DNA from: Bispira polyomma
Lineage: Eukaryota
Direction: 5' to 3'
NCBI GenBank assembly: GCA_965649765.1
Contig: OZ287752.1
Coordinates: 24,986,001 to 25,050,000 of the forward strand
DNA length: 64,000 bases
Position 1 is the stretch's first letter, and each line of letters starts with the position of its first letter. This document shows positions 36,401 through 62,020 of the stretch, piece by piece. The translations under genes were made by a program, and so were the position numbers. Below the pieces are notes generated by a model. That model ran no database searches. It was not told the origin of the DNA and worked only from the letters and a program-made list of their open reading frames with translations.

Positions 36401-39400
36401 CATATTGTTGACGTTGACGGTGTTTTAACAACTACTGAACAATCAACTTTAATTAATAATGATAGCAGGAGCCCCAGACAATGTTCTGACGTAAGTTTTA
36501 AAATAAATGAACTACATTACAGGTTTTGTCAGGTTTCAGCTCAATTATTACATTTATATCTTCGTGAAATGAGCACTTAAACCTTATTAGAAATTTGTTC
36601 AATACTCGACCTTTTTACCCAAGAAGTGTAAAAGAAGAAATGTGTCCAATTTCCAAGTACAATTACACCTTTAATGTTAATGTGTGTTAACATTTTGCAC
36701 ATTATAAAACTCGAATACAAATGTAGCATTAGATTTAGGGAGATTATCAGATATTGAATAAAGGCATACTACAACAAACCCAAAACCACAACGCATCTTT
36801 GAATATAAGACAAAGTTAATGGTCTATATGGGTAAAGTGCTCCTCGCCTGAGATCATAAGTTCACATTTCTCATTATTTTAGCATGTGCCTGCTGCTGGA
36901 TACATGTTAGTATTGTCAGTCATATTATTCACACTGATAACTTTATTAATTGTGTTTTGTCGATGCTTTGTTCCTAAAATATTTGGGTGTGTTCTAATCT
37001 CATGACTTTCATTTCACTGTGGCCTAGTGGTTAGAAACGGTAGCTTCACAATAATTGGCTTCTCACCAATGAAAGTTAGAACCCTGTTTGCTCCTTAATT
37101 TAGGAAAGTTTGTCAGATACTTGCCGTAGGCCGTTGGTTTACAGTGCTTTGGTACTGGTTTCTTCCATCCTTAAATCTGGCTGTCACAACAGGACAAATG
37201 CTGTTGAATAATGGATCACCAGTAAAACATGTGTATACATAGAGATATGTATGAAAAACAAGCTAATGGAAATTACCACATTTCTAAAGAATTGACCATT
37301 AGGAACTTATTACTTTAGTTATGTAATTACAATTTCAGCCACCCCTTTTCCACATTAAGAAGCAATTAGCTTTAAAAACAACAACATAATACTACATATC
37401 CTGTCTGATATCGACTAGGTAAATAGATTGAATATGAGAGCTTTAATGTGTAATCATTTAACTAAACATGTGGTGATAAAAATTATACATGTTATTCACT
37501 CATATATTTACCTCAACTATTGAGCTATTTAGCTCTGACTCTTTTGTTAATTTGGTCTGACATGTAACATATTTTGTAGCTTCCCCTCAGTCAGTGAGTG
37601 TCTCTACTATCGGTCCTGTTCTCAAAGATGTACCACAGACTATCACCTGTACAGTGTCCTCTATCTACCCTGGTAAAGACTCCACAGAGTTCAGACTGAA
37701 AGTTGGTGACCAGTACTACAGACAAGGTACAGAGACTGAGGTACAGAAAGATAGTGATGTCACAGTCACTAAAACATTTACTCTGAGTTTTACTCGTGAT
37801 CAACATGGTAATGATGTTTTGTGTGAAGTGACCTGGATGAAGGACACTAGTGTACAGACAGTGAGAGAATCAAAAATACAGGAGTTGATGGTCTATGGTG
37901 AGTTATAGCTATGATGTATAAGCACCACACAAAGATAATATATAGAAATCAACAATTCATGGCACAGAGAAGTTGTAATATATAAACGAATAAACAAATA
38001 GTATATTAAATATGTGGTCTATAATCGGCTGACTTGTCCACATTAAGAATCAATTAGCTAGAAAAAACAACAACGTAATCTTACATATCCTGTCTGATAT
38101 CGACCAGGTAAATAGATTGAATATGAGAGCTTTAATGTGTAATAATTTAACTAAACATGTGATGATAAACGAGATGAATATTATTCGCTCATATATTTAC
38201 CTCAACTATTGCGCTATTTAGGTCTCACTCTTTTGTTATTTTGGTCTGATATGTAAAATATTTTGTAGCTTCCCCCCAGTCAGTGAGTCTGTCTACGGTT
38301 GGTCCTGTTCTTAGAGATGTACCCCAAACTATCACCTGTACAGTGTCCTCTATTTACCCGGGTAAAGACTCTACAGAGCTTAGGCTGAAGGTTGGTGACC
38401 AGTACTATACACAGGGTACAGAGACTGAGGTACAGAAAGGTAGTGATGTCACAGTCACTAAAACATTTACTCAGAGTTTTACGCGTGATCAACATGGTGA
38501 AGATGTGTTGTGTAAAATGACCTGGATGAAGGACACTAGTATAAAGACATTAATGAAGTCGGAGACACAGCAGTTGGGGGTGTATGGTGAGTGTAAAATG
38601 AAACCTGATTTTACATGTTTAGGTGGAAAATTAATCAATTTTATGTTCAATGAATCACATACTAATCATCAGTTTTATGTTTATATGTAAGTTTAATACC
38701 AACCTGATATAGTTATTTCATTTCTGCATTGTGAAATTGTTGAATATCTCTTACATTTTGTTGTAATTGCCCCTAAAACTAAAATTAAACTAATACACTG
38801 GCAAGTGTATAATATTTCTGTTATAGCTGTTATTCTGTTTTCTGCAATTACAGTATAGGCAGTAAATTGAATGTTGCATCTGAAATGTGTTACGTGATTA
38901 AGTGTATCATAATAATTTAAAAGTCTAGTTATTATTTACATTTGAGAAAATACTAAATTACGTATGCAATCTAGCCTGCTGAGAGGAACTACCCAATGGA
39001 AATTACTGAAACATTCTAATAGTTGAGGTTGAAATAAAGGGGTTTGCATTTAGAGGCTTGCACAAGAAGTTTGATCTCGATGGTCAAATTAAAGAGTATT
39101 GAACAAAAGGCTAGAGAAGTAAAAAAGAGGTTGATATGAAACAAGCTTAAAGCATATACATATATTCAGGCAATATGATGGTATAATAATAGTACAATTA
39201 AAGACAATAATTACATACCAAATACCTGTTAATACCGGCAAGAGATATGTGAATTTACAAAATAGCTGTGCTTCTAAGAGCCTGATATTAGAATGAAACT
39301 AACTGCTGTAGAATGGGGAGATGAAGTGATCAATTTTTGTCGATGGTGTTTTTTTGACGTTTGTGATTCAATATGGTAATAGCTAAGGGAGCACACCTGA

Positions 39401-42400
39401 CTGAGAAGAAGGAATGATTTGATTTGTCATTGTGTGATTGGTCACTCAGGCATAATAGAAGTATATGAACTGAAGTGCTCTTCCCCTGTAGGGTAGCAGG
39501 TGGTTGCTAGCCGCAGGTTCAAAATAGTGTAAATTGTCTCCGGCAGTGTCAAAACCGGTTGTTTTTTGTAGGTGATTGCTTGAATAGGTTACACTGTAAT
39601 TTGATTTATACTTCACCCAGGGAATCAATCATTACTCCAAGTTTCTACTACTGGATTGTCAGCAAAGACAGAAAAAAAGATTTAATGTATGCCAACAAAA
39701 GTGGATCTCATATGTAATCTGATAACTACACATTTATGTAGAAAATGGATATCAGATTTATACAATAACGTAAAACAGAACAGTATAATCCATTGCATTG
39801 AAGTGTTCTTTGTAGAATTGTAACTTTCACTGAAATAGGTAAAATAGAACAGGTGAATCATACAACAATTCATCAACAATCATAACAATGATTTTACTAG
39901 ATTGTAGACACATTAATGTCTGATATTTATATTTTAATTTTAGCTCTCCCACAATCAGTCAGTCTTTCTTCCAAAGAGTTTGTAGTTGAAGGTAAATCTA
40001 TACATCTCCAGTGTACAGTTCCCTCTATCTACCCTGGAAAAGAGTCCACAGAGTTAAGACTGAAGGTTGGTACCCAGTACTACACACCAGGTACAGAGAC
40101 TGAGGAGACAGATGATATTAACATAAAGGTTACTGCAAGTTTTACTTTGTCATTCAACCGTGAGCAGCAAGATGATGCAGTAAGTTGTGCAGTCACTTGG
40201 ATGGGAGGGACGAGTATGGAAACAGTGAAACAGTCAGATACACAGAGACTGGATGTTTATTGTGAGTGAGATCAATCTATTACTTTTTGTCAGACAGTTG
40301 TTTTTAATATTGTACTTCTGATTTTCTTAAGACATAGTGTCAAATAAAAGGATACCATAAATGACTCTATATTGGCATTTATAGGTGATACTAATATATG
40401 AATTTGTAGTATTAATAGAACTACAAAGTACTTAAACAAAAGAAAAAATAAGCGTATTACCTCACTGCCAACATAAAAATGGTTTTGGCTCATTTACTTT
40501 AGGGTATTAAACATTTCTGCACTATATATTAATCATGAGGTTATCATAGTTATCTCTTACTGAGCATTAATTTTGGACCCATTCCACAGAACAAGACTAC
40601 CTTTCCAACCAACGTAAAAATCGCTTGAGCTCATTTAAACAAAAAAACATTGCAGTTATCATAACCAAATTTAATTTAATTATTTGATTTACAACTAGCG
40701 AGTACTTCAATTTAATTATTTGACTTACAACTAGCAAGTACTTTAAAAACTAGAAACTGAACTCATATTGGAGGCATTACTTCGATTGGCTGATTAAAAT
40801 ATACTTCGCTTTAAAATTCATTTGCAAACAAGTAAACAACCACGCCACTACATCTGGGCCTTACAAAATGGTGAGAATGTTTTGCAAACAATGTGGTAAT
40901 TAGTGTGTCAAGTGTCAGGTGTAGAGGTAAGAAACTAGAATGGTGGAAGGTAAACCAATTTTCACATGCTTTCCTAATAACAATGTAGCACTTGGTCATT
41001 AGTTTTGATTGCTTTAATTATACATGTATTAGCCAACTGATTTTATATTTGTTGCATTAAAACATGTTTATTGTTTACAATTGTTAAGATCCCCCTACAT
41101 CAGTTACCAAACCTACTGTCTTCGCTCCATCACCACTGTTAGAAGGTACAGAAGTGAATGTCACTTGCACAACAAACAGTTACCCCAGTCCTAGACTAAG
41201 ATTGTACAGGCAGGGGACTACTGGGAAACTCAAACAAGTAAATGATAACACACTGAGTTGGGTTAAGACATTGACTAGAAGTGACAATGGAGTTCAACTT
41301 TACTGTAAAGCTGATGATGATGGATTGTATACAGGATGGGAATTTGATGTGACATCAGAAAGACTGCGAATAGATGTTTTGTGTAAGTGCTATAAATTCT
41401 ACTAAATTTTAGGAGCACTTAGTGAATTAAAACTTTATCTTGCTGCTGACATTACAGATTTTAACAGATGTCCCTTGTGGTGTATGTTTTGTTTTGCTTA
41501 TAATAACAGTGTTTTCAGGGCTGATAAATGTCATACTGAATAAAAGCCCAGAATTTAAAAATTTCATTATCAACCTTTTACTAAAATAATAGAAGTATTC
41601 TGGCAGAAAAACTGTATATATCAGAAGGAAAAACAACTTATACAGTACAGTAACTATTTTTGTTTATTATAACAATTGTGACTACCACACTAACTATTCG
41701 TAAAGCTTCTAGAGATATAGTACAGGAATAAAGACACATATAACTTTAAATGTAAGTCATCAAGATAAATGATTGCACATATAAATGTCCTTCTATAATT
41801 CAGTAATTGCATACATTCATCTGTATATACTTATTTGTATTTTGTTTTTTATATCACATTTGTAGGCATGTACTAAACCCTGAAAATGTTTGCATTTTAG
41901 TTATCATTGGATGAATTCTCTGTTGCTGACTAGTAAACAAAGTAAAACGTTCACTACAACCATTATTAATGGTATTGTCTTTGTTTTAGTTGAGGCAACA
42001 TCAGTATCAATAGAACCAGTCTTCTCATCACCACTTAATGAGGGTGACACCAATCAGATCATATGTGAAACAGAAGCAAATCCTGCTCCAATACTAACCT
42101 TGTACAGAGGTACAGATTTAGAGAAAGTACAAATAGACAGTAGTTTACAGACAAACATTACAGTCCAGAGAGAGATCAATGGGTTAAAATTCTACTGTAC
42201 AGCTACATCATCAGATACTGATGTTCTAGAGTACAGTGTGACATCAGTTGGTGTGTATTATACAGTGATATGTAAGTATGAATGCTTCACTACATTCAAT
42301 CTGTAATATCTCATTTTATGTAAAACATCAATGACTTAATATAATACACTTATAACTAAACACCTACCACTTGATGCAACATTATCTTTGGTTTTTAATG

Positions 42401-45400
42401 GGAAAAGTGTCTTTATTTATTTGTGTACCCATTTTGTTTTGTGTATATTTAAATCTAGCTTTACTATTTTTTTTAATCATTTTGGCAATGCATGGTATCT
42501 GCTGTTAGAGTTGATCAATTAACAGGAGGGACAAAATTTGAAGTGGTTTGCCATGTCACACCACTACTAGAGCTTTTTCTGTGTCCCTTTTGATGAATTT
42601 ACTCACAATAATTAGCAGTTTAAACTGTTAGATCAGATAGTTTGTTCGTTATTAAGATTTACTTACGATTTGCTTGCATAATAAAGCTATTATCTTGATA
42701 CTCTCTATTTAGAATTAGTCAGCATTGAAGTCACCACTACACAAGTTGTGCTCAAACCATTTAACACATTATTTATCCACATGTGACTATCGTTACAAAA
42801 TATATTTTTTCCAGTTTAATGATATTTGTTTTATTTTATGATTTAGAACTTAAATGATTTAGTACTGTATTTGAATATTGTGACCGATGATATTTTGACA
42901 CAACCGGTATTTTGAGAATTAAGGTGTTGCCAAAATATCCGTTGATATGCCACAATGACATTTCGGGTTGCTGAATGGTGTTTTTGTGAAATGGTTTTGT
43001 AAGTTAATCTTACCACTTGAATTATGCAGAAGTGTTCCTAAAGTAACAAAAAACACCACAGAAATACAATGAACCACTTTATATATGTTTCAAAATTGTA
43101 TTACCAAACTAATTTCTTAAATGTTCCTGCCAAATTACTTCTTCAAGGGCCTCCTGTCTCAGTCCACACAAAAAATTTATTCTCCACCTAAATTCATTAT
43201 TCAGCTGCTATAGCTAACCCCTTCTTTCTTTTGCCCACCCTCTATTAACCAATAACAACCCTTTATACATTGCATCCAAGCTTTACCTGATGGAATCAGT
43301 TTTATTATTACTTTGAACTGCAAACACAAAGGATGTTCAATCAACATTTTGGTTGACATTTTATTGACCACTGGAATTAATTTTACATAAGGTGTATCGG
43401 TATGGTTAATATAATATTGTGCAAGTATGGGAAGAACGAAAAAGAAACCACTTCACAATATCATGAACCCAATAAACCAACCATAAGAAAGAATACAACT
43501 CAAGAAAAGATTTTGCAAGAACAAGCGTCAGGTAGCCAGGTAAAAACTAACATTCTGGCAAATACATACATCCCACTGGCAGCAGCTCAGAACCCATTAG
43601 ATCGGTCATCTGATAACGTTCACATTGAAACAGTTGGTAATCAAATTACACCTCAAGCTATGTCAGAGAATGCAAACTATAACCATCCGGCTGCATATCA
43701 GTCCTTAGCTCAGCTGTTGGTGCCACCGTTAGTGAAGAACTGCTAACGTTCAGATCAATATAAGACTGGAAAGGATTGAAGGAAAGGCATGAAACTCTAC
43801 TCCACTCGGGCCCCAACTAATGAGATTCATAATGGCATGCTGTTTGAACCTAGGACCAACAACACGAGCACACCAAGATGGGATTGTTCCCAACCTGGAG
43901 ATGTTGCGTGCAATCCCTAATGTGCAAACAGCAGTCAACAAACAAATGGTTGGTTACCAGATAGCTTCTCAGAGAGAATTGTACCAAGGTAAGGTTAACC
44001 CTCGCCTGTGTTCAGGACTTTTTAACAATACAGATGGGACATCGACCTCAAGCGTAGAGGGCCCAACGAAGGTTGGGTGGGGGGTTATGCCAAGAAAAAA
44101 ACAACGTTCAACGACCTCTTGCTCATTTAATAGACTGCTGGCCAGTTAACTAATGCCCTACTTATATCCGACATTGGAAAATATGTTGCAATACTTAACA
44201 TGAGCGAAAGTAAAAACAATTTTTTGTTTAGGAAACAATCGTGAGATATGGCTTTTAAAACAATTTGCAGGACAACAGAAGATCCAATTTGGATTACTTC
44301 AATTTCAAAATTGTAGATGCTGTCCATAGCTGCAACACAAACAAAGCTGCTATCAGTATTACAAATGATATATATATTTCCTTATTATTACACTTCTAGA
44401 TCAACAATGACTTACAACTACTGCTTACAACTACTGCTTACTTTCTCTTCCTAACAAGTGTAACCATTCTTAAATCAAAACTTTTTAAAACTTTGTATAA
44501 TATCCAACACGTGTGTCCTTAACGAAAACCAAATGAAGAACTTTTGATATGAAAGCATACACATATGTCACAACCAAATAAACAGCCGAAATTGTGATGT
44601 CTCAAACGAAGTTAAAGCTTCAAGGGAACAATGACTTTAAATGGTTATAAATATAAAACAAACTCTATTTTTTTGGTGCTTTTAATGTTGTAATATGTCG
44701 TTCATAGTTAGCATTCGAACAGACATGACCCTTTTAGGCAGTTTAACTTACACAATTAAGGACTCATTTCATCATTTCTAATAGCTTAGGATACATAACT
44801 TAAAAGGATGTGTGAGCATATATATTTGCTTCAATGTGACATGTTTTTGTGAATAATAAATTTTTATTATGAATAAAATATGTACAGCTTAAACCCTATA
44901 TAATTGTTACTCAAGTCGTTTATTGTATAAATACTGTTTGATAGTGCTGGTGAATCAAAAACTGATTTATTTTGAAACAAAATGTTCATGCCATCTTGTT
45001 TTCATATGTTAACAGTTTCACCAAATTCCAACACCTTGAATCCTGAAGCATCCGATGCAGTACTAGCGGGAAGTAACAAAACACTGACATGTACAACAGG
45101 AAGCAGTAACCCTGTCAGTTATATGGTGTGGGAGAAGAGAGGGACAGAGGTGACATCTGGTGTGACATCACAGATACAGGATGGAGAGTATGGAGGAAAA
45201 GTGTTAAAAAGTAGTTATACATTTACAGCTGGGAAGTCAGATAATGGGTTACTGGTGTCATGTACTCCAGTGTGGGAAGTAACAGACGTTATACAATACA
45301 GAAGAGAGGTCAATATCAATGTCAGATGTAAGTAATATACACACTTTTTGATCAATGATTATAGTGATGTTAGACATACAACATTATTTACTACTATGTT

Positions 45401-48400
45401 ATTACTACTACATATCTAAATATATATATGTTTACCATACAATAGAGTTCATGTGATTAATACTGCACACTGACAATACAGATATTTGCAACATAAATAT
45501 AACATTCAAGAGACTACACAAAATAATTCCGTGATACAATGTGGCTTTGATTATTTAATTGTAGAATACAACTCTGACAACTGGTATATTTTTCAGAAGA
45601 TATTGTGAAGAATTATTACTGCAGTATTTAGTGATATTGTATTCATGATATTGCTATTTTTAAAATATAGATAACTTTCAACAAGCCTCATTCGTTGGTT
45701 TACTCATTAGAATAATATATAAGCATTCTTAATATCATAATCATACAGTTTATCATCACTAATACCTCTCATCGGTCACATTTACACAAATAGTCACTTC
45801 TAATATGTCACCAATAAAACTGTGACGAAAACTACATGTCAGAATATTTTGAAATGTTTAAGAACTGTCTTGAAAAATGAGGATTAGTAGCTCCGCAAAA
45901 AATGTATGAAACTGTTGAAAAATAGCAACCTGGTTGTGCCATCTGGCAGGCTCCAGGGTCGTTTTCCCATTGTAGTTACATTTCCATAAGTCTGCTAAAA
46001 TTGGGATTAGTGACCATAACTAACTAGTTTGTGTACATTTTTGTGGCCAATTGTTTATAAAAGTGAAGATTAGTGAACGTAAGTGTACATTCACTAGTGT
46101 AAGTGTAAATAATAATGTGAAATATTGTCTCATATCCCTCATTCATTAGAGTTTTTGACTTATAGGTCATATATATATTTAAGCTAGCCAAAAAAACAAC
46201 CCGAAATAACCATTAGTAACATTGAATCAGAATAAGACATCTGTGAGTGTAGCATGTTGTAGCATGATATTAAAAGTACCTGAACAACTTATTTATTCCA
46301 ATAGTTTCAGCACAGAACAACTGAAAATACAATTTCACTTATTTAGTTTTAGAATAAGATTATAAAGTTACAGGAGCAAGATGTTATGTTAACCAACACA
46401 ATAGAGAAGCCTGTTAAAATCCATACTATGGTTTAGTGGTAAGAGAAGTGATAGGAAATAGGTCTCTGTGGTAGCCATAATGATGCAGGTGGATACAATT
46501 ATTATTTGTCACTTATTTTTAATGGTATGTTTTATAATTTATTATATAATGACAACAGAGACAGATTTGGCATTTGTTATATTCATGTTGGTATTAATTG
46601 ATTGTGTATCTCTTATTTTATGAAGTTTCTCCAGCGGTAACAGTTGAGGCTACGCCTTCTCCGATAGATGAGGGGTCAGGTATTGCTATTAATTGTACTA
46701 TAACTGATGGCAACCCCAAGTCACTTACAAGTCTATCCTGGGAATTTAAACCCAAGTACCCCGACAGTCAGTCCCAGGCTGTACCGACAAATAACAGAGA
46801 ACTGATGATAGAGAACACAGTGTACACTGATGCAGGGACTTATAGATGTACTGTAGGGAATACAGTGGGAAGTGATACAGGGGAGATACAGATTGTTGTA
46901 CATTGTAAGTTATTATGTAAATGTACTGCAGGGAATACATTGGGGAGTGATACAGTAAGGATAGAGATTGTTGTACATTGTAAGTAATTATGAAGTTGTA
47001 CTTTAGGGAATACAGTGGGGAGTTATACAATAGAGATACATATAGTTGTACATTGTAATTATGTACATTTACTACAGAGCATAAAGGGGGGGGAGTGTTA
47101 CAGGGGGGATACAGCTAGTTGTACTTTGTAAGTAATTATGTAGATGTAGCAAGGCAATGCAGATTGTTGTACATTGTTAATAATTATATAGATGTTCTGC
47201 AGGGAATAAAGTGAGGAGTGATGCAGGAGAGATACAGATTTTTTACTTCGTAATTATGTAGATGTACTGCAGGTATTACAGTCGGAAGTGATACAGGACA
47301 GATAAGCATTTGTGTACATTGTAAGTAATTACTATGTAGATGTGCTGCAGAGAATACAACTTAGACGAATGAGGATTAAATAAATCTGGTTGTGAATTGT
47401 ATGTGGCATACCATTATTGTTGTATACGATTCTAGAACATGCGTAATATTTACATAGTTGCATTAAAGTTCAAGTACATTGGCAAATGAGTTTTGGTTTT
47501 TATACCATTTGTTATCTGCTCATTTATTTATAGATCCACCACAGTTGGATGGCATGGATAATCTGGTATTCTTTTCTGGATTAAATGAGAAAGTCATCCT
47601 CAGTTTGAAATTGAGAGCTTTTCCAGAGTTCACAAATCTAGAATCAGCATTTACCTGGATAAAGCCACTTGGTGTAAATAGCAGCGATGCTGTAGTTGGT
47701 TCCTCCAGACTAAGTGATGAGGTATTTGAATCTCTTTTCACCATAAACTCTGTAATGCCAAGAGATTATGGGAATTACGCAGTGTCTGCAGATAATGGAG
47801 TGAAGGGGGCTGTCAAGTTTACACTGGAACTTCAACAAAATGGTACACATCCATCCTAACTTCTATTATTTAACTTCTAAGTTAATGAGATTTTATCAGA
47901 AACTATGAACACATACGACAATATTGATATAACATACACAATCATGTCTACTACTGTGGCCTAGTAGACATGACACTCTTTTAGCGCTAATCCGAAGGTA
48001 CAGATAGGAGCTCACTGAGCACTTATATTAGGGGATCTCAATCATTGAGTCTCATATCAACTGGCTAAAACAATGGGGTTGTTTAAAATTTATATTCTAA
48101 AGCCTATATCTTATTTCAAGAAACTATTATATAGTTGTTCTGTTTCCACTTTTATAGTGATGAAATGGTTACTTTGGGCTTTAAATCTTGTGTAAGAGGA
48201 TGTATTACCCTACGGTTAAATGTGAATCAGATCATTGGCTTAGAATTAAACAATGTCATAATATAAACTTGTGACAGTGGAAGTGTGTTCTTTCATCAAT
48301 CAAAATGGATAACAAAGTAATTACAGATGATGTATTGGCCACCATATCCCTTTCGTATTTTCTGCATCAAGTTATCTTGGTCAGTATATAATTAACAAAT

Positions 48401-51400
48401 TATCCTCTATGACTCTTTCTTTGACTGATTATTTAATTACCAATTGTAATACAAGACCATTTGAATGTGCATTACTGTAAAAGTACTCACTATAAAAAGT
48501 ACTTGTCTCTTTTATATAATTTCAATTGCTGTTTTATGAAAATTTCATTACTGAAAACAAACTCAAACTACTTTCTAATTGGATATTAGAAGTTCTTCTA
48601 TGCAGCAAATCACATGTATTACATTTGTAGGTCCACCTGAAGCTGCCCGCGATGTGTCAGTTAAGGCCAGGGCGGCTGAAGAGGCTGTCGTATCTTGGGT
48701 TGTTGGATTAAATGGGGGAAGTATCCAAACTTTTAAAATCGTGCTGAAAAACACATCATCCAAGGAAAATGTTACTTTTGAGACAGACTTTTTGGATCCA
48801 CCTTCAGGAAAATATTTGGAATCAAACATAACAAATCTGAAGGCAGAGACTAAATACAAATTACACATTGTCAGTATAAACTTGTACAATGGAAGCAGTG
48901 AAACAAATAGTGATGAAGTGGCACTGATAACAAGAGGTGAGTAAGGTTATGTTATCATTACTAATTAGTACTAATTAATACAATAGTATTTCATCCTAAT
49001 TTTCATTCGAATAGATTACCAGCAGTTAGCACGTGTTGAGTCAGGGAATGATTTACCTAGTAATGTGAGATATCACACTGATTCTAGTTGCTTCCAAATT
49101 AAACTTAAATACAGAACTTTTATTACCCTTAACATCTTCTTACTTTCCGTCTTTGTGCTTTAAGGTAGTAACATCATTTTCAATGGAATGGACTTTTCAG
49201 GTTTCAATAAATAAATAAATATATGTACTTTTGTAATAATAAAGACGAAACCAATGACAAAATGGAGGACCGATGCATGTTGAAGATAACTGTAATACAT
49301 TTTCCGTGAAAAAAATAAAATTTAAATTTAAAGAAGTTGTTTTGGCAGCCATAATGTTTTGTTTTTAAAAATGAGGCCAAAGTTCAGCAGGAGAAAGATT
49401 TTGTAGGACAATCCCTTCTTGGTGTTAACAAGTTGCTTCAAATGAAATATACAATAGAACAGTAATGCTACAGTAATTAAGATTAAGTTGATTTTTTTTT
49501 TAAATAAGTATATAATTTACAACAAGTGAAAAAATATTTGTTTAATGACAACAATCAGTTAAGAATAACAATCATGGTGGAGCAGTCAAAGTATCCTGAA
49601 AATTAGGTGAGGCTGGCCCCAATAGTAGTATTGAGGCAAACTGTTAACTTTGGTAAAGAAATCTCTATTGGCTTTTCTGTTAATGATATAGATCATTTTT
49701 AAGGAAGTTGTCGTAGCGGCCATCTTTTTTTACAAGTGAGGCCAAAGTACAGCAGGAGCAAGCTATTATAGCAATAAACATATCCTCAAAATGTTGGGAG
49801 GCTACACGCAATATTATTCCTGTCAGACCATTAATAAAGAAAATCTCTATATACAGCATTTAAAACAAAGTATTCACAGTAGATAAACTAGCAACAGCCC
49901 ACACCACCAGGCACGGTTTTGAGAAGATCATAAAATATATGTAGACAAATGTCAGAATTATATTTTTGTAACTCAAGTATTCTATCAATACTAAAGTAGG
50001 ACACCCACAACCCTCAAACACAGTTGAGTTTTGATATTATAGATTATAACATGGTTTTATTAAATGAGACAGCTTACTATTGTGGACATTATGTTAAAGG
50101 ATAGCACTTTTAGTGCTAACGATCAGTAATTAAAGTATCGACCTTGTAGAATAGTAAAATGATAGATGAGAAATTATTCTAAAAGGATTAGTTATTAAGT
50201 ATATAAATGAAGTAGTCACCTTTGAGTAATTCAATTTATATTTTATTTTACCCACATTAAAATGTATTTTGATGAAAACCAATTAATCAATATAAGATTC
50301 ATATTACAGCCAAGCCCAATATAAAACAAGAAAGACTACTTGTTGATATTGATGGATCCACTGCAACATTGACTTGGGAATATACAGTTTTAGAATCAGA
50401 TTCCACTGTAGTGATTATAGAACAGTGTAGATCATCAGGAGATTGTATAGAGCACAATGTGACAGATAACACAGACCAGAGGTTAGAGGTTACTGTGACA
50501 GGTGGAAACGTCTTCTACTTAGTTATCTATTTGGATGGACTGCAGGCTTACAGGAGTGAGGAGTTCAATCAAATGTTGCCCAAATCAACAGAAGCCCCGG
50601 GTAAGCACCATAGAGTTAAAGATTTCACTGATATATCTAAACACACATCAAATCGAAATTGAGCATGGGGATGTTTGATAAACCTTTATATTACATTGAT
50701 ATAAGATATTGTCTAATGTCATTCTTTTTACATGCACATATAACAAATTGAACTTCTGTTGCACATTAAATCTTCATTATTTAAATAACTCATATTCCCC
50801 TTGGCAATAAAATCCTCGGTAAAAATGTGCCACTATGGCATTAATTAAACAAAGTAGAATAAAATTGTTTTTAAAAACACTAAATTTAAAAAAAATAACT
50901 ATTATTATATTTACTAAACTTGTTGCAAAACTTACTTAAATCTATCTTTTATTCTTAGGCAACTATTTTTTCCTCAGAATATTTTAACACAGATAACATG
51001 ATATAGGGATGTCTTTGGAACCTTGAAGTAGCATTTCTAAAGAAAATAACATTTATCCATTAGCAAATAGTTGTGAGGGCAACACAATAAACAAATCATT
51101 AATGTGTTTCTACTTTATTTTTCAGAACACATATCTGTAAATGATTTAAATATATATTATTCTTATATGCAAGTTGTTGTAATTTACATTGTGATCTACA
51201 ATATCATTCAAAGGAATTGGTAATTTGAAAACCATTTGTTTTTTATAATTTTCAGATGTAAAATCACTGCCTGTTGGTGAAATTGTTGGTGGAATCATTG
51301 CTGTTGCTGCTATTGTTATTATTGTATTACTAAGCATTTGGGTTTGCAGGAAAAAAAGACAACCAAAAGTATGTAGAATTGATGCTACATGGTGTTAATG

Positions 51401-54400
51401 AAAGCTAAAATCTATTTAACCAAATAGACTAGTTAAAATGCTTCAGTACAATTCAGTTTTTACTTTGTAAAATGTTTAATAATATTTACATTTAATAGGA
51501 AACCTCTGAAACTGAAATGGGTGTTTCTGAAGCCCCTTTTTACGTGAATGTGAAAAGATTAGATGAAGGAAATTATGAAGATTTAGGTAAAAGGAAATTC
51601 ACCGAGAAGTCATTTTATGCAGATCTAAAGGCTTTGGGCTCACAAGAACTGTGTACTTCTAATGAGGTAATACATTGTCACATTTGCATTTTCCCCTAAA
51701 TATTAAATTAACAGAAAATTAATTTATAGTTGGTTGCAATGAAACAAAGATATACCTAACAATACATGGTTTTACTATTTTTACTAACAAAACAATACAT
51801 TTTACAATTTACGTGATACAAACTTACAGGGATATCTGACGGTTCAGTTCCCGCAATTGCTACCTTAATCATTTAAAACAAATCATTTGGTTCCTATTTT
51901 TGTTTGCTAGCTTTAATCATTTTGTCACTCCCTGACCAATGATGGATGATGACCAATTAAGCTACATTTATACCCACAGTGCTACACTATCACATTCATA
52001 AGGCAAAGGATCAACAAGGAAAACATTCTCGTCGCCTAATCCCACCTCCCCAGCCAAGTAACAATTAATTTGAATTTGGATATTTAACATCCACTCTAGT
52101 ACCTGTTTATATTGGGACGGGTAGTTGGAAACGCTGGAGGAAACACTGCATACAGTTGATCAAGGTTCTGCACTGAAACCAGCGGCCCACAGTAAGGAAC
52201 TACCACCTTTCTCACATAGGCATCAAAGGGAGTCGCACTCATGCCGCCCAAAGGTCAGGGACCAGTGATTGTGAAGTGCAATGCTTGCTAACCACTAGGC
52301 CACCGCGGCCCCCAAATAACAATTAAGCTACATTTATACCCTCAGTGCTACACCATCAAATTTAAAAGGCAAAGGGCCAACAAGGAAAACATTCTCACTG
52401 CCTCCCCAGCCTACGGCAAATTATGAACTTAATATTATGTCATTTGACATTTTCAATCTTAGTCAAATCCATCTCTGCAATTAGAATAAAGTTGAGGAAT
52501 TCACACTAGCAGATCAGTTTTAGGTAAACATGCCTGGCTTACTAGGCGAGCAGCAATTATGATTCCCAATTACTATGCATAGGGATAGTCATATTAGGTT
52601 AAACCTATTATAAGTAACTGTCATATTGATTTATAACAATGCCAATTCCAATGTTTCACCTTGCTTGCACCTAGGGTGGTGTTTTAGTTATGAATGTACA
52701 CAGGGATTAGTATGTCTCTTTATTAAAGCTAGGTTCAGTTAATACAGATGACATGGTTGCTTTGTATACACATTGAACCATAATATTATGTTATATTGTA
52801 TGACGCCGATTGGTGTAGATTGCCTTGGTTGTGATCTGTGGTCTTACAAGATCTAACTCTGGGGCTAGTCCATGTGTCTAACACGTATGAATTCATTTTA
52901 AAGCTTGTAGCAACTTTAAATTTTACAATATTTTGTAAATACATAAGCATTTTACACAATTATACTAATTTGTACCAAAAAAAGTCCCCATCCACAATAG
53001 ACTGTGCTATGGTTTCAATTCTCACCCCTACCGTTGTCCTGATCTGACCTTCCTTTCCATTACTTCACTAAAAATTCTGCTTCAAAAGTGAAACACATTA
53101 TTATATGCATAGAAACCTTCATTTGACATTGAGGTTAAAAATTTTCTGCCACTGATGGAATGGCCTTAACAGTAAGACACATAATTAGTTTTGTGATTCA
53201 TGAAACCAAGCGTTTACATCATCTCTCAGTTAAATAGCTTTCACCTGTACTACTGTACTTAATGTTGGCCACCTCCAGAGACCCATAGGCTTCATGTGAA
53301 AGCATAGAAGCCTTCCTTTGACAATGAGGTCAAAATGTTACTGCCACAGATGGAATGGCCTTTAGCTTGGTAATGCCTATCCCATATATCTCAAACCTAA
53401 GTATATTCACCTTGCTCTTAACAATTTTACTGACATAGACAAAATGGCTATTGGCTTAGTGTTGCTTACCCTATACACTTAATACTTAAAAATATTAACC
53501 ATGATTTGACAATGGAGTCAAGATTGTACTCCGTAGGTAAACTGGTTAGGGTGTGATCTCACCATTTGCATCTTCATAAGTTTAATTACTAATTTCATTA
53601 TTATAAGCCGATTTGGGTAAATTGGTAAATCATATTCAGCCAAGTTCAGAAATTAAAACAGCACACATAATTTACAAGCTACAATAGTTATGTCCCTAAC
53701 TTAATGAACAGCATTCGATTATTAGATTACACTTAAGATTATTCAAATCCCTAAATATTATTAAGAGACATATATTTGGGGTACAATAATATTAAGACTA
53801 TAAAGTATTGCTTAAATTGGGATTATATGCTATATATGACTATTATCAAGTATTTTACACTGTATCAAAGACAAATGATACAGTGTAAAATACTTGATAA
53901 TAGTCATATAAAGTTATGACATGGAGGTTTTATATTTATAGTTCATTATTGACTGTGATTTTAGGTGAACCTCTATGAGAACAGTGACCAAGTATCTGTG
54001 TACAATGATGGTGATCTCAATATGGGTAATATATTGTGTAAAGGCCAGTACACCGTCAACAGACTAGGAATACTGAAAACCAAAGTTGGCAAAATTCCTG
54101 TAATGGTTAAAATGCCCAAAGGTATACATTTTCTTTATTGCAAATAATTACTCCATAATACATGATATTGTTCTCTTGCATGGTGTAAGCAACAAAAATT
54201 TTCTTCTATTTCCAAATATCTGTTTCAGCTGATGCTAAAACATTTCAAGCTCAGTACATTTTGAACCAGCGGGCATGTTTAGTAGGAATTGGACCAAACA
54301 AACATGTAGTAGAAATCTTCACTGTGGCATTAAATGGTATGATTTTTATTTCTCAATGAAATAATATGTTTTTATTTAATATATACATTTAATCTGTTAC

Positions 54401-56099
54401 CATTATAAACATTGTGCTAATGTTAGTTTGATATTTTCCATTAATAAAGGCACTTTTAAAAATGATCACCATTATACACTTATACTTACAGATAACCCTA
54501 ATGTGAGGCTTGTGACTAAGTATTATGCTACTGGCAATTTGAAGAAATATATAAATACATTTCCACAAAACCCAAAAAACAATGGCATAAAAAGACATTT
54601 GCTGGAGTTAACCTTAGATATTGTACAAGGACTTGCATACCTGGGCACACTTCAAGTAAGTGTAATTAATTATCCCTTCAAAATGTTTATTTTCATTTAA
54701 CATATTCCATCATTGAACCAAACATTGTGCTGTTGCTTGTTGTAAACCAATATTAATCTATGTTGAAGCACATTTTATAAGAAAATTTACTTTTAAATAC
54801 CCTTATGATATTTCAATGAAAACACAACAGCCTGAAATCCTGCACTTCTGTCTTTCCGCTGAACATGTCCTTGTGGATGAAACAGGGTCCTGTAGACTGA
54901 CTGGGTTTGACTTCAAAGATCATGTTCTACAGAGAGAAATGGTGGAAGAGGAAGAAGGGGTAAGAATTCATTCCCTTTTTGGTTTATCTTTAAATTATAT
55001 ATGCAAAAACATCTTTAAGGTATAGTATATTGCAAAAACAATGGTCATTAAAGAAGACTTATTTCAATTGTTTACTGATTACAGATGTATGGAGCCATAG
55101 AATGGAAGGCCCCCGAAACCATTGAATATTGCAAAGCTCATACAAAGTTATCTGATGTGTGGGCCTTTGGAGTGCTGTTGTATGAGATTTATAATGCAGG
55201 TCAGAGTTAACAATTAACCTATACCTTGGATTTGCTAATTTACTAATAATATTTCTTTATTAGACAAGCACAAAACACACATCTATGTGTGAATATATTG
55301 AATGTATAATCATATTTTACAACAACATAGTCTATCCTCAACAAGGGCATTTGTTATTATATGTAAAAGTTTTTACATTAAAGCAATTTTACTGCAATAA
55401 AAAGCCCATCATGGTTTTTAAAAAATTTGATTTGAAAATAGTGTTCAATATAATACTGTTAACATCTGATATAATTTGATGATGTTATAGGAATGACACC
55501 ATATCAAGGTCTGATGGAACATGATATTAAATCATATGTTAAAGGTGGAAAAATCTTATCAAGACCCACAGGATGTCCAAATGATGTGTGAGTACTAACA
55601 ATTAAAATATTAATCAGTATAATTAAAAGTAGCACATACATAATTAAGTGGTGTTTTTCTGCATGAGAGATATTTTTGTGCACAAAATTCTCATAAGTGG
55701 TAAACATCAAATACACTTGCAGTGTTCTATCAAGGAGGGGCTTTCTATGAATAAAAAATAAAATAAAGAATATGCTCAATTGTGAATTTGAATATCCTAA
55801 TCAAATATTGTGCCTGTGTACATGAATATTAGTAAGGCATTATCATAGATGTAAATAACAGAATGGTATACTAATGAATATAATGCACATCACAACAATA
55901 ATATGTTAGTTATATACATATTGGTGATTTCTATCTTAGATACAGTATCATGGAGAAATGTTGGGCATACAATGCACAAGAGAGACCTGCATTCCACAGT
56001 TTCTTATCAGATATATATCTGATGATGTCTAGTTCAGAAAAATTGGGTCACAGTAATGACGCCATGGAGTATGAACCAGTGACTTTCCCAGCAGTTTAA
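33359..56099 (+). CDS. Gene B: receptor tyrosine pseudokinase, SP-9xIg-FN3-FN3like-TM-tyrosine motifs-pseudokinase, about 1549 aa, 21 coding exons
   Basis: Exons: 33359-33401, 34579-34947, 37580-37897, 38269-38586, 39944-40261, 41089-41382, 41990-42271, 45016-45327, 46626-46904, 47534-47842, 48631-48936, 50310-50600, 51256-51368, 51499-51666, 53965-54121, 54229-54336, 54492-54655, 54831-54959, 55085-55199, 55491-55587, 55940-56099. All have AG/GT ends and compatible phases; the sum is 4650 nt with no internal stop found. Confidence 0.9.
34579..34947 (+). CDS. Gene B exon 2: V-type Ig domain
   Basis: LLLHCSY..ELSW...DEGQTFTCRV; 369 nt. Confidence 0.9.
35865..36080 (-). mobile_element. LINE RT fragment
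   Basis: HQSANRKYHSTKTALLTINNDI...LLDLSVEFDTI. Confidence 0.75.
36300..36390 (+). mobile_element. LINE 3'-end fragment
   Basis: gctgttgcgctttagaagatgcctagcatcaa..aaaatccataataataa is the reverse complement of 28055-28115. Confidence 0.7.
37016..37215 (+). mobile_element. Degenerate tRNA-derived SINE
   Basis: A-box-like tggcctagtggttag, decayed B box, and a central ggaaag..gtaggccgttggttt..ggtttcttcca similar to the 52069 SINE. Confidence 0.5.
37580..37897 (+). CDS. Gene B exon 3: Ig-like (C1/C2-like) copy 1
   Basis: ITCTVSSIYPG...RDQHGNDVLCEVTW; 318 nt. Confidence 0.9.
38269..38586 (+). CDS. Gene B exon 4: Ig-like copy 2 (recent tandem duplicate of exon 3)
   Basis: 318 nt; the upstream intron is also duplicated (offset 689 nt). 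Confidence 0.85.
39944..40261 (+). CDS. Gene B exon 5: Ig-like copy 3
   Basis: LQCTVPSIYPGKESTELRLKVG...VSCAVTW; 318 nt. Confidence 0.9.
41089..41382 (+). CDS. Gene B exon 6: Ig-like domain
   Basis: VTCTTNSYPSP...RSDNGVQLYCKA; 294 nt. Confidence 0.85.
41990..42271 (+). CDS. Gene B exon 7: Ig-like domain
   Basis: ICETEANPAP...NGLKFYCTA; 282 nt. Confidence 0.85.
43870..44290 (+). mobile_element. Degenerate Ngaro-like gag remnant
   Basis: VPNLEMLRAIPNVQTAVNKQMVGY...SGLFN resembles LPSFEDLKTDSKIQTEVQRRIRNY...SGRYR. Confidence 0.45.
45016..45327 (+). CDS. Gene B exon 8: Ig-like domain
   Basis: LTCTTGSSNPVSYMVW...SDNGLLVSC; 312 nt. Confidence 0.9.
46626..46904 (+). CDS. Gene B exon 9: Ig-like domain (I/C2-set)
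   Basis: INCTITDGNP..LSW...DAGTYRCTVGN; 279 nt. An alternative in-frame acceptor lies at 46635. Confidence 0.9.
46841..47360 (+). repeat. ~75 bp minisatellite derived from the 3' end and splice donor of exon 9
   Basis: About 7 decaying units of tagatgtactgyagggaatacagtggg.agtgatacagg.gagatacagattgttgtacattgtaagtaattatg. Confidence 0.85.
47534..47842 (+). CDS. Gene B exon 10: cysteine-less Ig-like domain
   Basis: LSLKLRAFP...FTW...DYGNYAVSADNGV; 309 nt, same length as the gene A equivalent. Confidence 0.85.
48631..48936 (+). CDS. Gene B exon 11: FN3 domain
   Basis: GPPE...VSWVVGLNGGSIQTF...NLKAETKY...N; 306 nt. Confidence 0.9.
50310..50600 (+). CDS. Gene B exon 12: FN3-like domain
   Basis: ATLTW...CRSSGDC...FYLVIY; 291 nt. 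Confidence 0.8.
51256..51368 (+). CDS. Gene B exon 13: transmembrane helix
   Basis: IVGGIIAVAAIVIIVLLSIWVC followed by RKKR. Confidence 0.9.
51499..51666 (+). CDS. Gene B exon 14: juxtamembrane tyrosine-motif exon
   Basis: FYVNV-x7-YEDL-x10-YADLK; 168 nt, phase 0-0. Confidence 0.85.
52069..52316 (-). mobile_element. Full-length tRNA-derived SINE with a 10-bp target-site duplication
   Basis: Minus strand: ggggccgcggTGGCCTAGTGGttag (A box), gagtgcgactcc (B box), tail caaattcaaa. Flanked by TAACAATTAA at 52059-52068 and 52317-52326, and sits between two copies of a ~100 bp repeat. Confidence 0.85.
53833..53910. repeat. Perfect 35-bp inverted repeat with an 8-nt loop
   Basis: tatatgactattatcaagtattttacactgtatca-aagacaaa-tgatacagtgtaaaatacttgataatagtcatata. 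Confidence 0.95.
53965..56099 (+). CDS. Gene B exons 15-21: tyrosine-kinase-fold pseudokinase domain and C-terminal tail
   Basis: VMVK; GNLKKY; DIVQGLAYL; ILHFCLSAEHVLV; LTGFD; EWKAPE; SDVWAFGVLLYEI; GMTPY; RPTGCP..Y.IMEKCW....ERPAF; ends MEYEPVTFPAV-stop (TAA 56097-56099). Confidence 0.9.
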
Positions 56100-61489: not shown

Positions 61490-62020
61490 ATCATTTCACA
61501 TGCTGAAATCTGACTCACGTGTGCAGGCAGAGGTTTAGAAGTGATTGAGAGAGTACAGGGTTGCTTCCTGCTTAGATACTAAAGGGAAAAATGCTTCTAC
61601 TTAAAAGTCCGGTAGATTTAGAGCTGGCATACATAAAGTTGAACTTAAAGTTGAAAGTGCAAAAAGGGTTCTTGCTGCAGTTCTGCAGGAGATGGAGAAA
61701 GGTAGATTAGACTGGGTAAATATTGAGACAGTTGAGAAAGTCAGAGCCCGAAATACTCAAAAAGTACCTTCTTTTCATACTAATGATACTAATGCAGTTA
61801 ATGTGAACAGACAGGTAGATTCTAGAGTGTGTGCATTATTCAACAAAAGCTCATGTAATCTTGAAAAAAAAAAAAATGTTACAAAGGGTACAAAGTACGA
61901 GCATTATTGCTCATAAAGAGACCCGTGGTAAAAAAAAAACATGAACACCCCATGAATAACTGCTTTAGTTACAAAAACGCCAATAAGGACTAGAACACAG
62001 AACAGCATGTTCAACACAAT
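61490..62020 (+). mobile_element. Ngaro gag fragment, interrupted by the Gypsy LTR
   Basis: KSGRFRAGIHKV..AAVLQEMEKGRLDW..VEKVRARNTQ..CALFNKSSC..VTKGTKYEHYC, a close match to 30378-31091. Confidence 0.85.

What the first reader, a model, noticed from the sequence alone, without database searches (positions are those of the whole stretch)
53965..56099. Kinase domain of gene B is a pseudokinase with an intact reading frame
Seen: the Gly loop GxGxxG reads CKGQYT; the beta3 Lys is kept (VMVK); the alphaC Glu position is Gln (ILNQRACL); the catalytic loop HRDLAARN reads HFCLSAEH; DFG reads GFD; the activation segment is acidic (EMVEEEEG). The C-lobe is well preserved (WKAPE, SDVWAFGVLLYEI, TPY, CP, CW..ERP.F), and all seven exons splice in frame. 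Established: loss of the HRD Asp and DFG Asp predicts no phosphotransfer. Known receptor pseudokinases (PTK7/Off-track, ROR, RYK, ErbB3, EphA10/B6) act as scaffolds, and none has a 9Ig+2FN3 ectodomain. Inference: the fold is retained for a non-catalytic role and probably represents an independent pseudokinase origin.
Basis: partly seen in the sequence, partly recalled or inferred. Interest (0 to 1): 0.75.

Follow-up and report, generated by a model that had tools for sequence, protein, structure and literature searches.

The report
Dead kinase tail of Ig receptor
This invertebrate surface-receptor gene ends in a tyrosine-kinase fold that has lost its catalytic residues yet is kept intact by selection, and it is one of at least 26 such genes in this genome, a receptor family for which I found no published description.

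Summary
Seven exons (53965-56099, + strand), all with AG/GT borders, join in frame and encode a tyrosine-kinase-like domain. A profile alignment to solved kinases gives H-F-C for HRD, His for the catalytic Asn and G-F-D for DFG, and puts the activation-loop Tyr of Src-type kinases at the acidic run. The beta3 Lys is kept. The alphaC Glu is Gln, on weaker alignments. The Gly-loop register is ambiguous, but at most one of its three glycines remains.

It is not a one-off. This scan met the same family before on other DNA of this genome (s1-694583, s1-694570). I found 26 copies of the catalytic-loop exon, 23 on one contig. None of the 25 with a readable residue has the HRD Asp, and none of the 26 has the DFG Asp. 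Twelve fragments from unnamed public assemblies show the same losses.

Selection is acting. dN/dS to the three nearest paralogs is 0.31-0.43. The coding exons hold no indels, whereas the introns hold 26 gap events in 1143 aligned bases.

The family looks derived from PDGFR/VEGFR/FGFR-class receptors, not PTK7. A juxtamembrane exon carries conserved YxN and ITAM-like tyrosine motifs. No RNA data exist. Whole-domain folding and phylogeny were left out because exons may not be joined here.

The parts
34560..34982 (+). Ig-like exon 1 (bounds are those of the open frame, not of the exon)
   Evidence: Pfam ig 21.9 bits, V-set 15 bits; ORF list
37594..37908 (+). Ig-like exon 2 (open-frame bounds)
   Evidence: Pfam C1-set 24.6 bits, ICAM D2 18.1 bits
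38283..38690 (+). Ig-like exon 3, close copy of exon 2 (open-frame bounds)
   Evidence: Pfam C1-set 15.4 bits, below cut-off; translation resembles 37594-37908
39916..40269 (+). Ig-like exon 4 (open-frame bounds)
   Evidence: Pfam ICAM D2 19 bits and C1-set 16.1 bits, below cut-off
41154..41405 (+). Ig-like exon 5 (open-frame bounds)
   Evidence: Pfam C2-set_2 20.2 bits against cut-off 21
41890..42306 (+). Ig-like exon 6 (open-frame bounds)
   Evidence: Pfam Ig_3 17.3 bits, below cut-off
44982..45335 (+). Ig-like exon 7, CD80-like C2-set (open-frame bounds)
   Evidence: Pfam C2-set_2 35.1 bits, E 1.4e-08
46598..46987 (+). Ig-like exon 8, I-set (open-frame bounds)
   Evidence: Pfam I-set 37.6 bits, Ig_3 35.9 bits
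47479..47859 (+). Ig-like exon 9 (open-frame bounds)
   Evidence: Pfam I-set 17.4 bits and Ig_3 17.5 bits, below cut-off
48579..48944 (+). FN3 exon (open-frame bounds)
   Evidence: Pfam fn3 24.2 bits, E 4e-05, cut-off 25
50276..50662 (+).
   Evidence: No Pfam family at E<=1; open frame seen
51256..51368 (+). Transmembrane exon: hydrophobic run IVGGIIAVAAIVIIVLLSIWV followed by CRKKRQPK
   Evidence: 70-76% identical in paralogs L028, L030 and L034
51499..51666 (+). Juxtamembrane exon with three conserved tyrosine motifs: FYVNV (YxN), then NYEDL, ten residues, FYADL (ITAM-like spacing)
   Evidence: the three tyrosines and the spacing recur in L034, L030, L028, L035, L033 and L031; the exon is duplicated in L029 and L032
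53965..54121 (+). Kinase exon E1: beta1-beta3, degenerate Gly loop, VMVK Lys kept
   Evidence: G27, V48 and K49 invariant in 14 of 14 paralogs; weak hhalign to the VAVKMLK exon of L050
54229..54336 (+). Kinase exon E2: alphaC to beta5, Gln at the alphaC Glu place
   Evidence: Q in 12 of 13 paralogs; hhalign read
54492..54655 (+). Kinase exon E3: hinge, alphaD-alphaE; the most variable exon
   Evidence: Pfam PF07714 17.9 bits at profile 76-119; profile against the PDB
54831..54959 (+). Kinase exon E4: catalytic loop HFCLSAEH, GFD, acidic activation segment
   Evidence: Profile alignment to EGFR, Lck, Src and Lyn; residue counts; 26 copies in the genome
55085..55199 (+). Kinase exon E5: WKAPE, SDVWAFGVLLYEI
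   Evidence: Pfam PF07714 37.8 bits; 465 solved sequences at E<=0.001
55491..55587 (+). Kinase exon E6: TPY...CP
   Evidence: Pfam PF07714 10.8 bits at profile 203-231; found in 23 paralogs
55940..56099 (+). Kinase exon E7: CW..ERP.F, tail with MEYEPV, stop TAA
   Evidence: Pfam PF07714 17.8 bits at profile 234-257

Best explanation
Gene B is a working member of a large, mostly single-contig family of type-I Ig/FN3 surface receptors. Its cytoplasmic part is a tyrosine-motif juxtamembrane segment followed by a catalytically dead tyrosine-kinase fold.

Shown: the fold has lost the catalytic base (HRD Asp to Cys), the catalytic Asn (to His) and the Mg-binding DFG Asp (to Gly). The same losses occur in every family member examined. 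The replacement residues and the acidic activation segment are themselves conserved. The gene is under purifying selection.

Inferred: the domain cannot transfer phosphate and probably does not bind Mg-ATP. It serves as a docking or allosteric module. Its pseudo-active site and its Glu-rich activation segment, which lies where related kinases carry the regulatory Tyr, form a fixed binding surface. The receptor signals when ligand-driven clustering lets a separate cytoplasmic tyrosine kinase phosphorylate the conserved juxtamembrane tyrosines (YxN and YxxL-x10-YxxL). These then recruit SH2 proteins.

Origin (inferred, moderate support): a PDGFR/VEGFR/FGFR/RET-class receptor kinase that died before the family expanded. 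That would make it independent of PTK7.
For: Catalytic residues:
- E4 profile against solved kinases fixes the register.
- Asp at the HRD place in 0 of 25 own copies (C 12, Q 11, K 2; 1 copy not aligned there) and 0 of 11 fragments.
- Gly at the DFG-Asp place in 26 of 26 own copies and 11 of 11 fragments.
- His at the Asn place in 26 of 26 and 11 of 11.

Conservation: across paralogs E4 is 63-91% and E5 62-95% identical to this gene, while E3 falls to 29%.

Selection:
- dN/dS is 0.31, 0.36 and 0.43 to L034, L028 and L030; other subfamily pairs give 0.08-0.44.
- The exon alignments to L034 hold no gaps (E4 aligned over 34 of 43 codons), against 26 gap events in 1143 aligned intron bases. Intron identity of 76% is close to the exon pS of 0.21.
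- Splice sites are conserved.

Family size: 26 E4 copies, 23 on contig C5; 34 matches with the profile.

Other assemblies: 12 of 19 hits in 1.84 billion representative proteins are single-exon fragments with HRC, HHC or HQS plus LSAEH plus GFG.

Origin:
- P0023 finds only VEGFR1, FGFR1/2, KIT and CSF1R in its best 60.
- The best non-family hits of the E4 profile that keep HRD and DFG are two genes at C5:69.9 Mb (L044/L050 and L045).
- The alphaC exon of L050 best matches PDGFRA, FLT3, FGFR, RET and KIT.
- All six kinase-domain introns of gene B have a counterpart of the same phase in L050.
- An Abl-like gene (L041) has E5 and E6 in one open frame.

Juxtamembrane motifs are conserved in 8 paralogs.
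Against: - No RNA run holds the locus, so expression and splicing are unconfirmed.
- On this gene's own branch there are 23 non-synonymous and 11 synonymous private changes. That gives omega of about 0.56, binomial P=0.084, not significantly below 1. Eight of the non-synonymous changes and none of the synonymous ones lie in E3.
- Some family copies carry stops: L032 and L033 in E7, L016 in E5.
- The class assignment rests largely on one short alphaC-beta5 stretch of a relative. By themselves this gene's exons point in different directions: E3 to BMPR2 and JAK2, E4 to EGFR and Src family, E5 to JAK, BTK and ABL. P0025 puts Src and Lyn first.
- The N-lobe alignments are weak.
- Shared intron places may be older than the PDGFR/FGFR class.
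- The signalling mechanism is inference only.
Confidence: 0.65

Rival explanations
1. This particular copy is a young pseudogene, or is drifting under relaxed constraint. Its frame is still open only because too little time has passed.
For: Omega on its private branch is about 0.56 and is not significantly below 1. Other copies of the family carry stops. There is no RNA evidence.
Against: There are no gaps in the exon alignments to L034, although the introns of the same gene pair hold 26 gap events per 1143 aligned bases. All twelve splice dinucleotides are intact. Pairwise dN/dS is 0.31-0.43. E4, E5 and E6 have few private amino-acid changes: 2, 1 and 1.
Confidence: 0.1
2. The domain is still an enzyme with non-canonical chemistry. 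The conserved His, Cys/Gln, Glu and His of the catalytic loop together with the kept beta3 Lys could form a new active or metal site, as some proteins once called pseudokinases turned out to do.
For: The substituted catalytic loop is among the most conserved parts of the protein. H12, C21 and G25 are invariant, and H5, R35 and E36 nearly so, in 37 sequences. The beta3 Lys is invariant in 14 of 14.
Against: Three catalytic residues are lost at once. The Gly loop is degenerate and the alphaC Glu is gone. The residue at the Asp place varies (C, Q, K, S) within the family, which fits a structural role better than a catalytic one.
Confidence: 0.07
3. The family is a diverged, multiplied offshoot of PTK7/CCK4/Off-track, or of an Eph pseudokinase such as EphA10. 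In that case it is not an independent origin.
For: PTK7 is an Ig-only receptor pseudokinase that is old in animals (recalled). EphA10 shares HRG..H and GFG in the table of PMC13259870, and Eph receptors have two membrane-proximal FN3 domains (recalled).
Against: PTK7 keeps HKD..N and has ALG. No PTK7 or Eph chain appears in the best 60 of any PDB search made here. Only 60 of up to 659 hits are shown per search, so lower ranks are unseen. P0023 and the shared intron set point to the PDGFR/FGFR class. No ephrin-binding domain was seen in the Ig exons.
Confidence: 0.1

Closest known systems
PTK7 / CCK4 / Off-track receptor pseudokinases
   Same: Type-I receptor with an all-Ig distal ectodomain and a dead tyrosine-kinase fold that keeps the beta3 Lys; expected to act as a scaffold or co-receptor.
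   Different: PTK7 keeps HKD..N and changes only DFG (ALG) and one Gly-loop residue (table in PMC13259870). Here Asp, Asn and DFG Asp are all replaced and the alphaC Glu is lost. PTK7 has 7 Ig, no FN3 and one gene per genome (recalled). Here there are 9 Ig-like exons plus FN3 and at least 26 genes.
EphA10 (and EphB6)
   Same: The same style of motif decay: HRG..H with GFG in EphA10 against HFC..H with GFD/GFG here; FN3 next to the membrane; juxtamembrane tyrosines.
   Different: No ephrin-binding domain was seen here. EphA10 keeps GXGXXG and the alphaC Glu and has lost the beta3 Lys; here it is the reverse. No Eph chain is among the best PDB hits shown.
PDGFR / VEGFR / FGFR / KIT / RET class of receptor tyrosine kinases
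   Same: Ig-like ectodomain. The relative P0023 matches these best. The six kinase-domain introns are shared with L050, a member of this class in the same genome. The activation-loop Tyr place is still Tyr in 6 of 11 outside fragments.
   Different: Catalytically dead; many copies; FN3 near the membrane; no kinase insert of note; ITAM-like juxtamembrane exon.
Paired Ig-type immune receptors with ITIM or ITAM signalling (for example KIR and LILR in vertebrates)
   Same: Clustered multigene family of Ig receptors. Tyrosine motifs of YxxL type. A kinase-less neighbour, gene A, has YENV, YEMT and YTDL in its tail.
   Different: Those receptors have no kinase fold. An immune role here is conjecture; no expression or ligand data exist.
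Nephrin / Sns-type adhesion receptors
   Same: A long row of C2-type Ig domains, including CD80-like C2-set_2 hits, then FN3, a transmembrane segment and a tyrosine-rich tail.
   Different: Nephrin has no kinase-like domain. The similarity is at domain-type level only.

Membership tests
Protein tyrosine kinase fold (Pfam PF07714) | Match to the family profile along the domain, in order | tested here: met
   Tested exon by exon only. E3, E5, E6 and E7 match profile positions 76-119, 167-199, 203-231 and 234-257 in order, with E5 above the cut-off. The E4 profile aligns to catalytic loops of solved tyrosine kinases. E1 and E2 are supported only by weak hhalign results. The joined domain was not scored.
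Pseudokinase (sequence definition) | At least one of the beta3 Lys, HRD Asp or DFG Asp is missing | tested here: met
   HRD Asp is Cys and DFG Asp is Gly; in addition the catalytic Asn is His. The beta3 Lys is kept.
Pseudokinase (functional definition) | No phosphotransfer activity | not testable with these tools
   Needs a recombinant protein assay.
PTK7 / CCK4 / Off-track | Motif pattern GXSXXG, VLVK, alphaC E, HKD..N, ALG | tested here: not met
   Table 2 of PMC13259870 (passages read) compared with HFC..H, GFD and alphaC Gln here.
PTK7 / CCK4 / Off-track | Seven Ig domains with no FN3; one orthologue per genome (recalled) | tested here: not met
   Nine Ig-like exons and at least one FN3; 26 copies.
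PTK7 / CCK4 / Off-track | Kinase domain nests in the PTK7 clade of a tree | not tested
   No tree was built, because exons may not be joined and no reference sequences were on hand. No PTK7 chain is among the best 60 hits.
PDGFR / VEGFR / FGFR / RET-class receptor kinases (descent from) | Kinase domain most similar to this class | tested here: inconclusive
   Met for the relative P0023 and for L050. This gene's own exons give mixed best hits. P0025 gives Src and Lyn first, then FGFR3.
PDGFR / VEGFR / FGFR / RET-class receptor kinases (descent from) | Shared exon-intron structure of the kinase domain | tested here: met
   Six of six introns have a counterpart of the same phase in L050, with offsets of 0 to 2 codons. 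An Abl-like gene differs. How far these introns reach beyond this class was not tested.
EphA10-type Eph pseudokinase | Ephrin-binding ectodomain and an Eph-type kinase domain | tested here: not met
   Ectodomain exons hit Ig and FN3 families only. No Eph chain is among the best hits shown.
ITAM-bearing receptor | YxxL/I, 6 to 12 residues, YxxL/I in the cytoplasmic part (consensus recalled) | tested here: met
   NYEDL, ten residues, FYADL. The same spacing recurs in L034, L030, L028, L035, L033 and L031. Phosphorylation and tandem-SH2 binding cannot be tested here.

The most novel reading that the evidence does not exclude
The family is an invertebrate recognition system of immune or self/non-self type. 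Its receptors have a fast-changing Ig outer part wired to a fixed signalling cassette. That cassette is an ITAM-like tyrosine pair plus a dead PDGFR/FGFR-class kinase whose frozen, Glu-rich 'always phosphorylated-looking' activation segment docks a cytoplasmic kinase or phosphatase. Kinase-less neighbours such as gene A would act as the opposing partners. This would be an independent invention of paired-receptor signalling built on a pseudokinase.
Probability: 0.2. Interest if true: 0.8.

Novelty: new variant of a known kind. Interest (0 to 1): 0.5.

Why it matters
Receptor pseudokinases are few and mostly old, single-copy genes; a recent review counts eight in humans (PMC13259870, abstract and passages). 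Here a receptor pseudokinase has been multiplied to at least 26 copies. Its pseudo-active site is conserved more strongly than the rest of the domain. That argues the dead cleft itself does a job. It offers many natural variants for working out what a dead kinase cleft binds.

If the descent from PDGFR/FGFR-class kinases holds, this is a further independent route to a receptor pseudokinase. The family also joins such a domain to ITAM-like motifs, which bears on how invertebrates build recognition receptors.

For this scan the gene is a third sighting of one family, so its added value is mainly in four points: the motif register, the selection tests, the likely parent class and the juxtamembrane motifs.

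Tried and rejected
- Single-exon searches against solved structures with E4 alone found only a GCN2 chain at E=0.74. The E1 profile found nothing. The E2 profile found five non-kinase chains.
- The look-up of sequencing runs found no RNA holder. Read laying therefore showed only DNA contigs. They reproduce the window's sequence in two samples, but the differences listed in exons look like cross-laid paralogs. They say nothing on expression or alleles.
- The representative-protein search with E4 gave no full-length annotated relative. Of its 19 hits, 12 are family fragments. Seven are long repetitive proteins of 31-53% identity or no aligned stretch. I read three of these (P0005, P0006, P0017) and judged them unrelated. 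I did not read the other four (P0012, P0013, P0018, P0019).
- The listing of cluster members gave no organism or useful name.
- The search for homologous proteins with P0023 gave four more unnamed fragments.
- P0025 against the PDB did not repeat the clean VEGFR/FGFR/KIT result of P0023. Src and Lyn came first, through an alignment that runs across intron-derived residues.
- Four literature searches found no description of this family. PMC8662651 (passages read) places CCK4 in an insulin-receptor-like subgroup and mentions unclassified sequences. Its supplements, which I could not open, may list such sequences. The Kwon et al. 2019 pseudokinase survey is not held.
- I rejected a PTK7 reading and an Eph reading; the reasons are under the rivals.
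- I left out every joined step, because a spliced model is to be searched exon by exon here. That means no whole-domain Pfam score, no structure prediction, no fold search and no kinase-domain tree. dN/dS totals are sums of per-exon counts, not computed on a joined sequence.
- I did not check the splice phases of the ectodomain exons.
Full report
**What is there.** The window is AT-rich animal DNA (GC 0.29-0.40). Between 53965 and 56099 the + strand holds seven open pieces bounded by AG and GT:
- E1 53965-54121
- E2 54229-54336
- E3 54492-54655
- E4 54831-54959
- E5 55085-55199
- E6 55491-55587
- E7 55940-56099, with TAA at 56097-56099

The intron phases are 1,1,0,0,1,2, so the exons join in frame.

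Scored one exon at a time, E3, E5, E6 and E7 hit Pfam PF07714 in colinear order. Only E5 is above the cut-off (37.8 bits). E1, E2 and E4 hit nothing.

**Register of the motifs.** E4 alone matches no solved kinase; its only hit is a GCN2 chain at E=0.74. A profile built from E4 of 26 genomic copies and 11 outside fragments (A1) does align to EGFR, Lck, Src and Lyn catalytic loops. In that alignment:
- H-F-C lies on H-R-D.
- The His of LSAEH lies on the catalytic Asn.
- G-F-D/G lies on D-F-G.
- The Glu run lies where Lck and Src have their activation-loop Tyr.

The N-lobe is much more diverged. Profiles of E1 and E2 find no kinase in the PDB.
- The beta3 Lys reading rests on an invariant V.VK in 14 of 14 paralogs. 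It also rests on a weak hhalign match of VMVKMPK to VAVKMLK of an active receptor kinase, L050 (probability 36%).
- The alphaC reading (Gln for Glu) rests on hhalign of E2 to the outside relative P0023 (probability 73%) and to L050 (14%). In P0023 and L050 that position aligns with the alphaC Glu of VEGFR1, FGFR2 and PDGFRA.
- The Gly loop can be read as CKGQYT. It can also be read as GNILCK, by continuing the alignment backwards. Either way no more than one glycine of three is left.

**It is a family.** A six-frame search of the window's own genome with E4 finds 26 places, all open. Twenty-three are on contig C5, in clusters around 18.3-19.3, 20.8-22.0 and 24.2-25.4 Mb. With the profile there are 34 matches at E<=1. 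These include more distant dead relatives (L040: HHQ and GFA; L043: HHC..N and GFT) and then active kinases.

In 13 further loci fetched at 10 kb the seven exons are colinear; E1 was not found in one of them, L039. Splice dinucleotides sit at the same places.

Residue counts at the catalytic places:

| Place | 26 own copies | 11 outside fragments |
|---|---|---|
| HRD Asp | C 12, Q 11, K 2, one not aligned | C 9, Q 1, S 1 |
| Catalytic Asn | His in 26 | His in 11 |
| DFG Asp | Gly in 26 | Gly in 11 |

E4 and E5 are the best conserved exons, at 63-91% and 62-95% identity to this gene. E3 drops to 29%. So the dead catalytic centre is the most constrained part of the domain.

Some copies are broken: stops in E7 of L032 and L033 and in E5 of L016.

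This scan had already described the family from two other places on the same contig (s1-694583 and s1-694570). My copy count of 26 agrees with the 'about 27' of the first.

**Outside this genome.** E4 against 1.84 billion representative proteins gave 19 hits. Twelve are short single-exon open frames from unnamed ENA, JGI and Logan assemblies. They carry HFC, HYC, HRC, HHC or HQS, then LSAEH, then GFG or GFD, and the exon has the same 43-codon length. No full-length annotated protein was found. The source organisms are unknown to me.

**Selection.**
- Against its three nearest paralogs the gene has dN/dS of 0.31 (L034), 0.36 (L028) and 0.43 (L030). Other subfamily pairs give 0.08-0.44.
- Introns of the L001/L034 pair are 76% identical, close to the exon pS of 0.21. 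They hold 26 gap events in 1143 aligned bases, whereas the exon alignments hold none, with E4 aligned over 34 of its 43 codons. That excludes long neutral decay.
- On the gene's own branch, however, I count 23 non-synonymous and 11 synonymous private changes. Omega is about 0.56, P=0.084, and E3 has 8 to 0. Constraint on this particular copy is therefore shown by its frame and splice sites rather than by omega.

**Expression.** No public RNA run holds the locus. The three holders are DNA from one study. Laying them only confirmed the assembly in two samples and showed a very high-copy repeat at 52067-52313.

**Where it came from.**
- P0023 is a mis-predicted 229-residue model from another assembly. 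It contains an E2-like and an E4-like exon (HRC, LSAE-Q where the other fragments have LSAEH, GFG). Among its best 60 solved chains it finds only VEGFR1, FGFR2, KIT, a CSF1R-FGFR1 chimera and FGFR1, at E 3.7e-08 to 2.4e-06.
- In the own genome, the best non-family matches of the E4 profile that keep HRD and DFG are two genes at C5:69.9 Mb.
- One of them, L050, has WEFPREKL, GEGSFG, VAVK, HRDLATRN and DFG. Its alphaC exon best matches PDGFRA, FLT3, PDGFRB, FGFR, RET and KIT.
- All six kinase-domain introns of gene B have a counterpart in L050 of the same phase, at the same or nearly the same place. The catalytic exon runs 39 residues from the His to its end in both.
- An Abl-like gene of the same genome has E5 and E6 in one open frame.
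- Six of the 11 outside fragments still have Tyr at the place of L050's activation-loop Tyr. The own-genome copies have E (11), K (9), V (3), T or Q there.

Against this, the gene's own exons give mixed best hits, and P0025 puts Src and Lyn first.

PTK7 keeps HKD..N and has ALG. EphA10 has HRG..H and GFG but keeps the Gly loop and has lost the Lys (Table 2 of PMC13259870, passages read). I conclude that descent from a PDGFR/VEGFR/FGFR/RET-class kinase is the best reading (about 0.6). A PTK7 origin is unlikely but is not excluded by a tree.

**Rest of the gene.**
- Nine Ig-like exons lie between 34560 and 47859. The clearest hits are a CD80-like C2-set at 35.1 bits and an I-set at 37.6 bits.
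- One FN3 exon scores 24.2 bits against a cut-off of 25.
- A further membrane-proximal exon has no Pfam hit.
- A transmembrane exon lies at 51256-51368 and a juxtamembrane exon at 51499-51666.
- The juxtamembrane exon reads FYVNV, then NYEDL, ten residues, FYADL. The three tyrosines and the ten-residue spacing recur in six paralogs of two subfamilies. The exon is duplicated in two more.
- Reading these as a YxN site and an ITAM-like pair is my reading of recalled consensus motifs.
- Gene A, upstream in the window, ends after a transmembrane exon in a short tail with YENV, YEMT and YTDL and has no kinase exons. This agrees with note s1-694643.

**How it most likely works.**
- Shown: the fold is dead by sequence, conserved and selected.
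- Inferred: it is a docking or allosteric module. Its fixed acidic activation segment stands in for a phosphorylated loop.
- Inferred: output runs through the juxtamembrane tyrosines, phosphorylated by another kinase after clustering.
- An immune-type recognition role is a conjecture. It is suggested by copy number, clustering, variable ectodomains and kinase-less partners, and I give it about 0.2.

**Literature.** Four full-text searches and passages of two papers gave no description of such a family. Supplements were closed and one survey is not held, so absence from print is not established.

**Verdict.** This is a new family-level variant of a known kind (receptor pseudokinase), already met twice by this scan.

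Noticed in passing
window 52067-52313: A short element in the intron before kinase exon E1 has word depths of 1e5 to 1e7 in all three DNA runs, with A/T-rich loose ends on both sides. It is probably a very high-copy SINE- or MITE-like repeat.
   Followed up: no
window 47157-47400: Partial tandem echoes of the 3' end of the Ig exon at 46598-46987, 54-72% identical at protein level.
   Followed up: no
window 14562-15013: Gene A has a transmembrane exon and then a short tail exon with TTYENV, SNYEMT and AEYTDL followed by a stop, and no kinase exons. It looks like a kinase-less relative of gene B.
   Followed up: partly
L050 (G000:C5:69890500-69899500): An active-looking PDGFR/FGFR/RET-class receptor kinase gene shares all six kinase-domain introns with gene B. 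It carries tandem echoes of exon pieces: EPLCIIMEY three times, a 14-residue unit about eight times after the catalytic exon, and two decayed copies before the WMAPE exon.
   Followed up: partly
L043 (G000:C5:87440800-87441150) and L049 (G000:C1:66967160-66967430): Two further dead kinase-like catalytic exons. L043 reads HHC..N with GFT and still has the catalytic Asn, so it may be an intermediate. L049 reads HRK..H with GFG.
   Followed up: no
L029:6336-6551 and L032:3450-3662: The juxtamembrane tyrosine-motif exon is present twice in tandem in these two paralogs.
   Followed up: no
E4 exons of L001, L027 and L031: Between subfamilies the synonymous difference in E4 (0.32-0.37) is about half that of the other exons (0.5-0.9). 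This could be gene conversion or a constraint on the nucleotides. With about 30 synonymous sites the figure is noisy.
   Followed up: no
window 29804-31091 (-), 60403-61078 (+), 61692-61916 (+): Open frames share a Cys/His-rich stretch, and one has a reverse-transcriptase-like motif. They are probably transposon remains flanking gene B.
   Followed up: no
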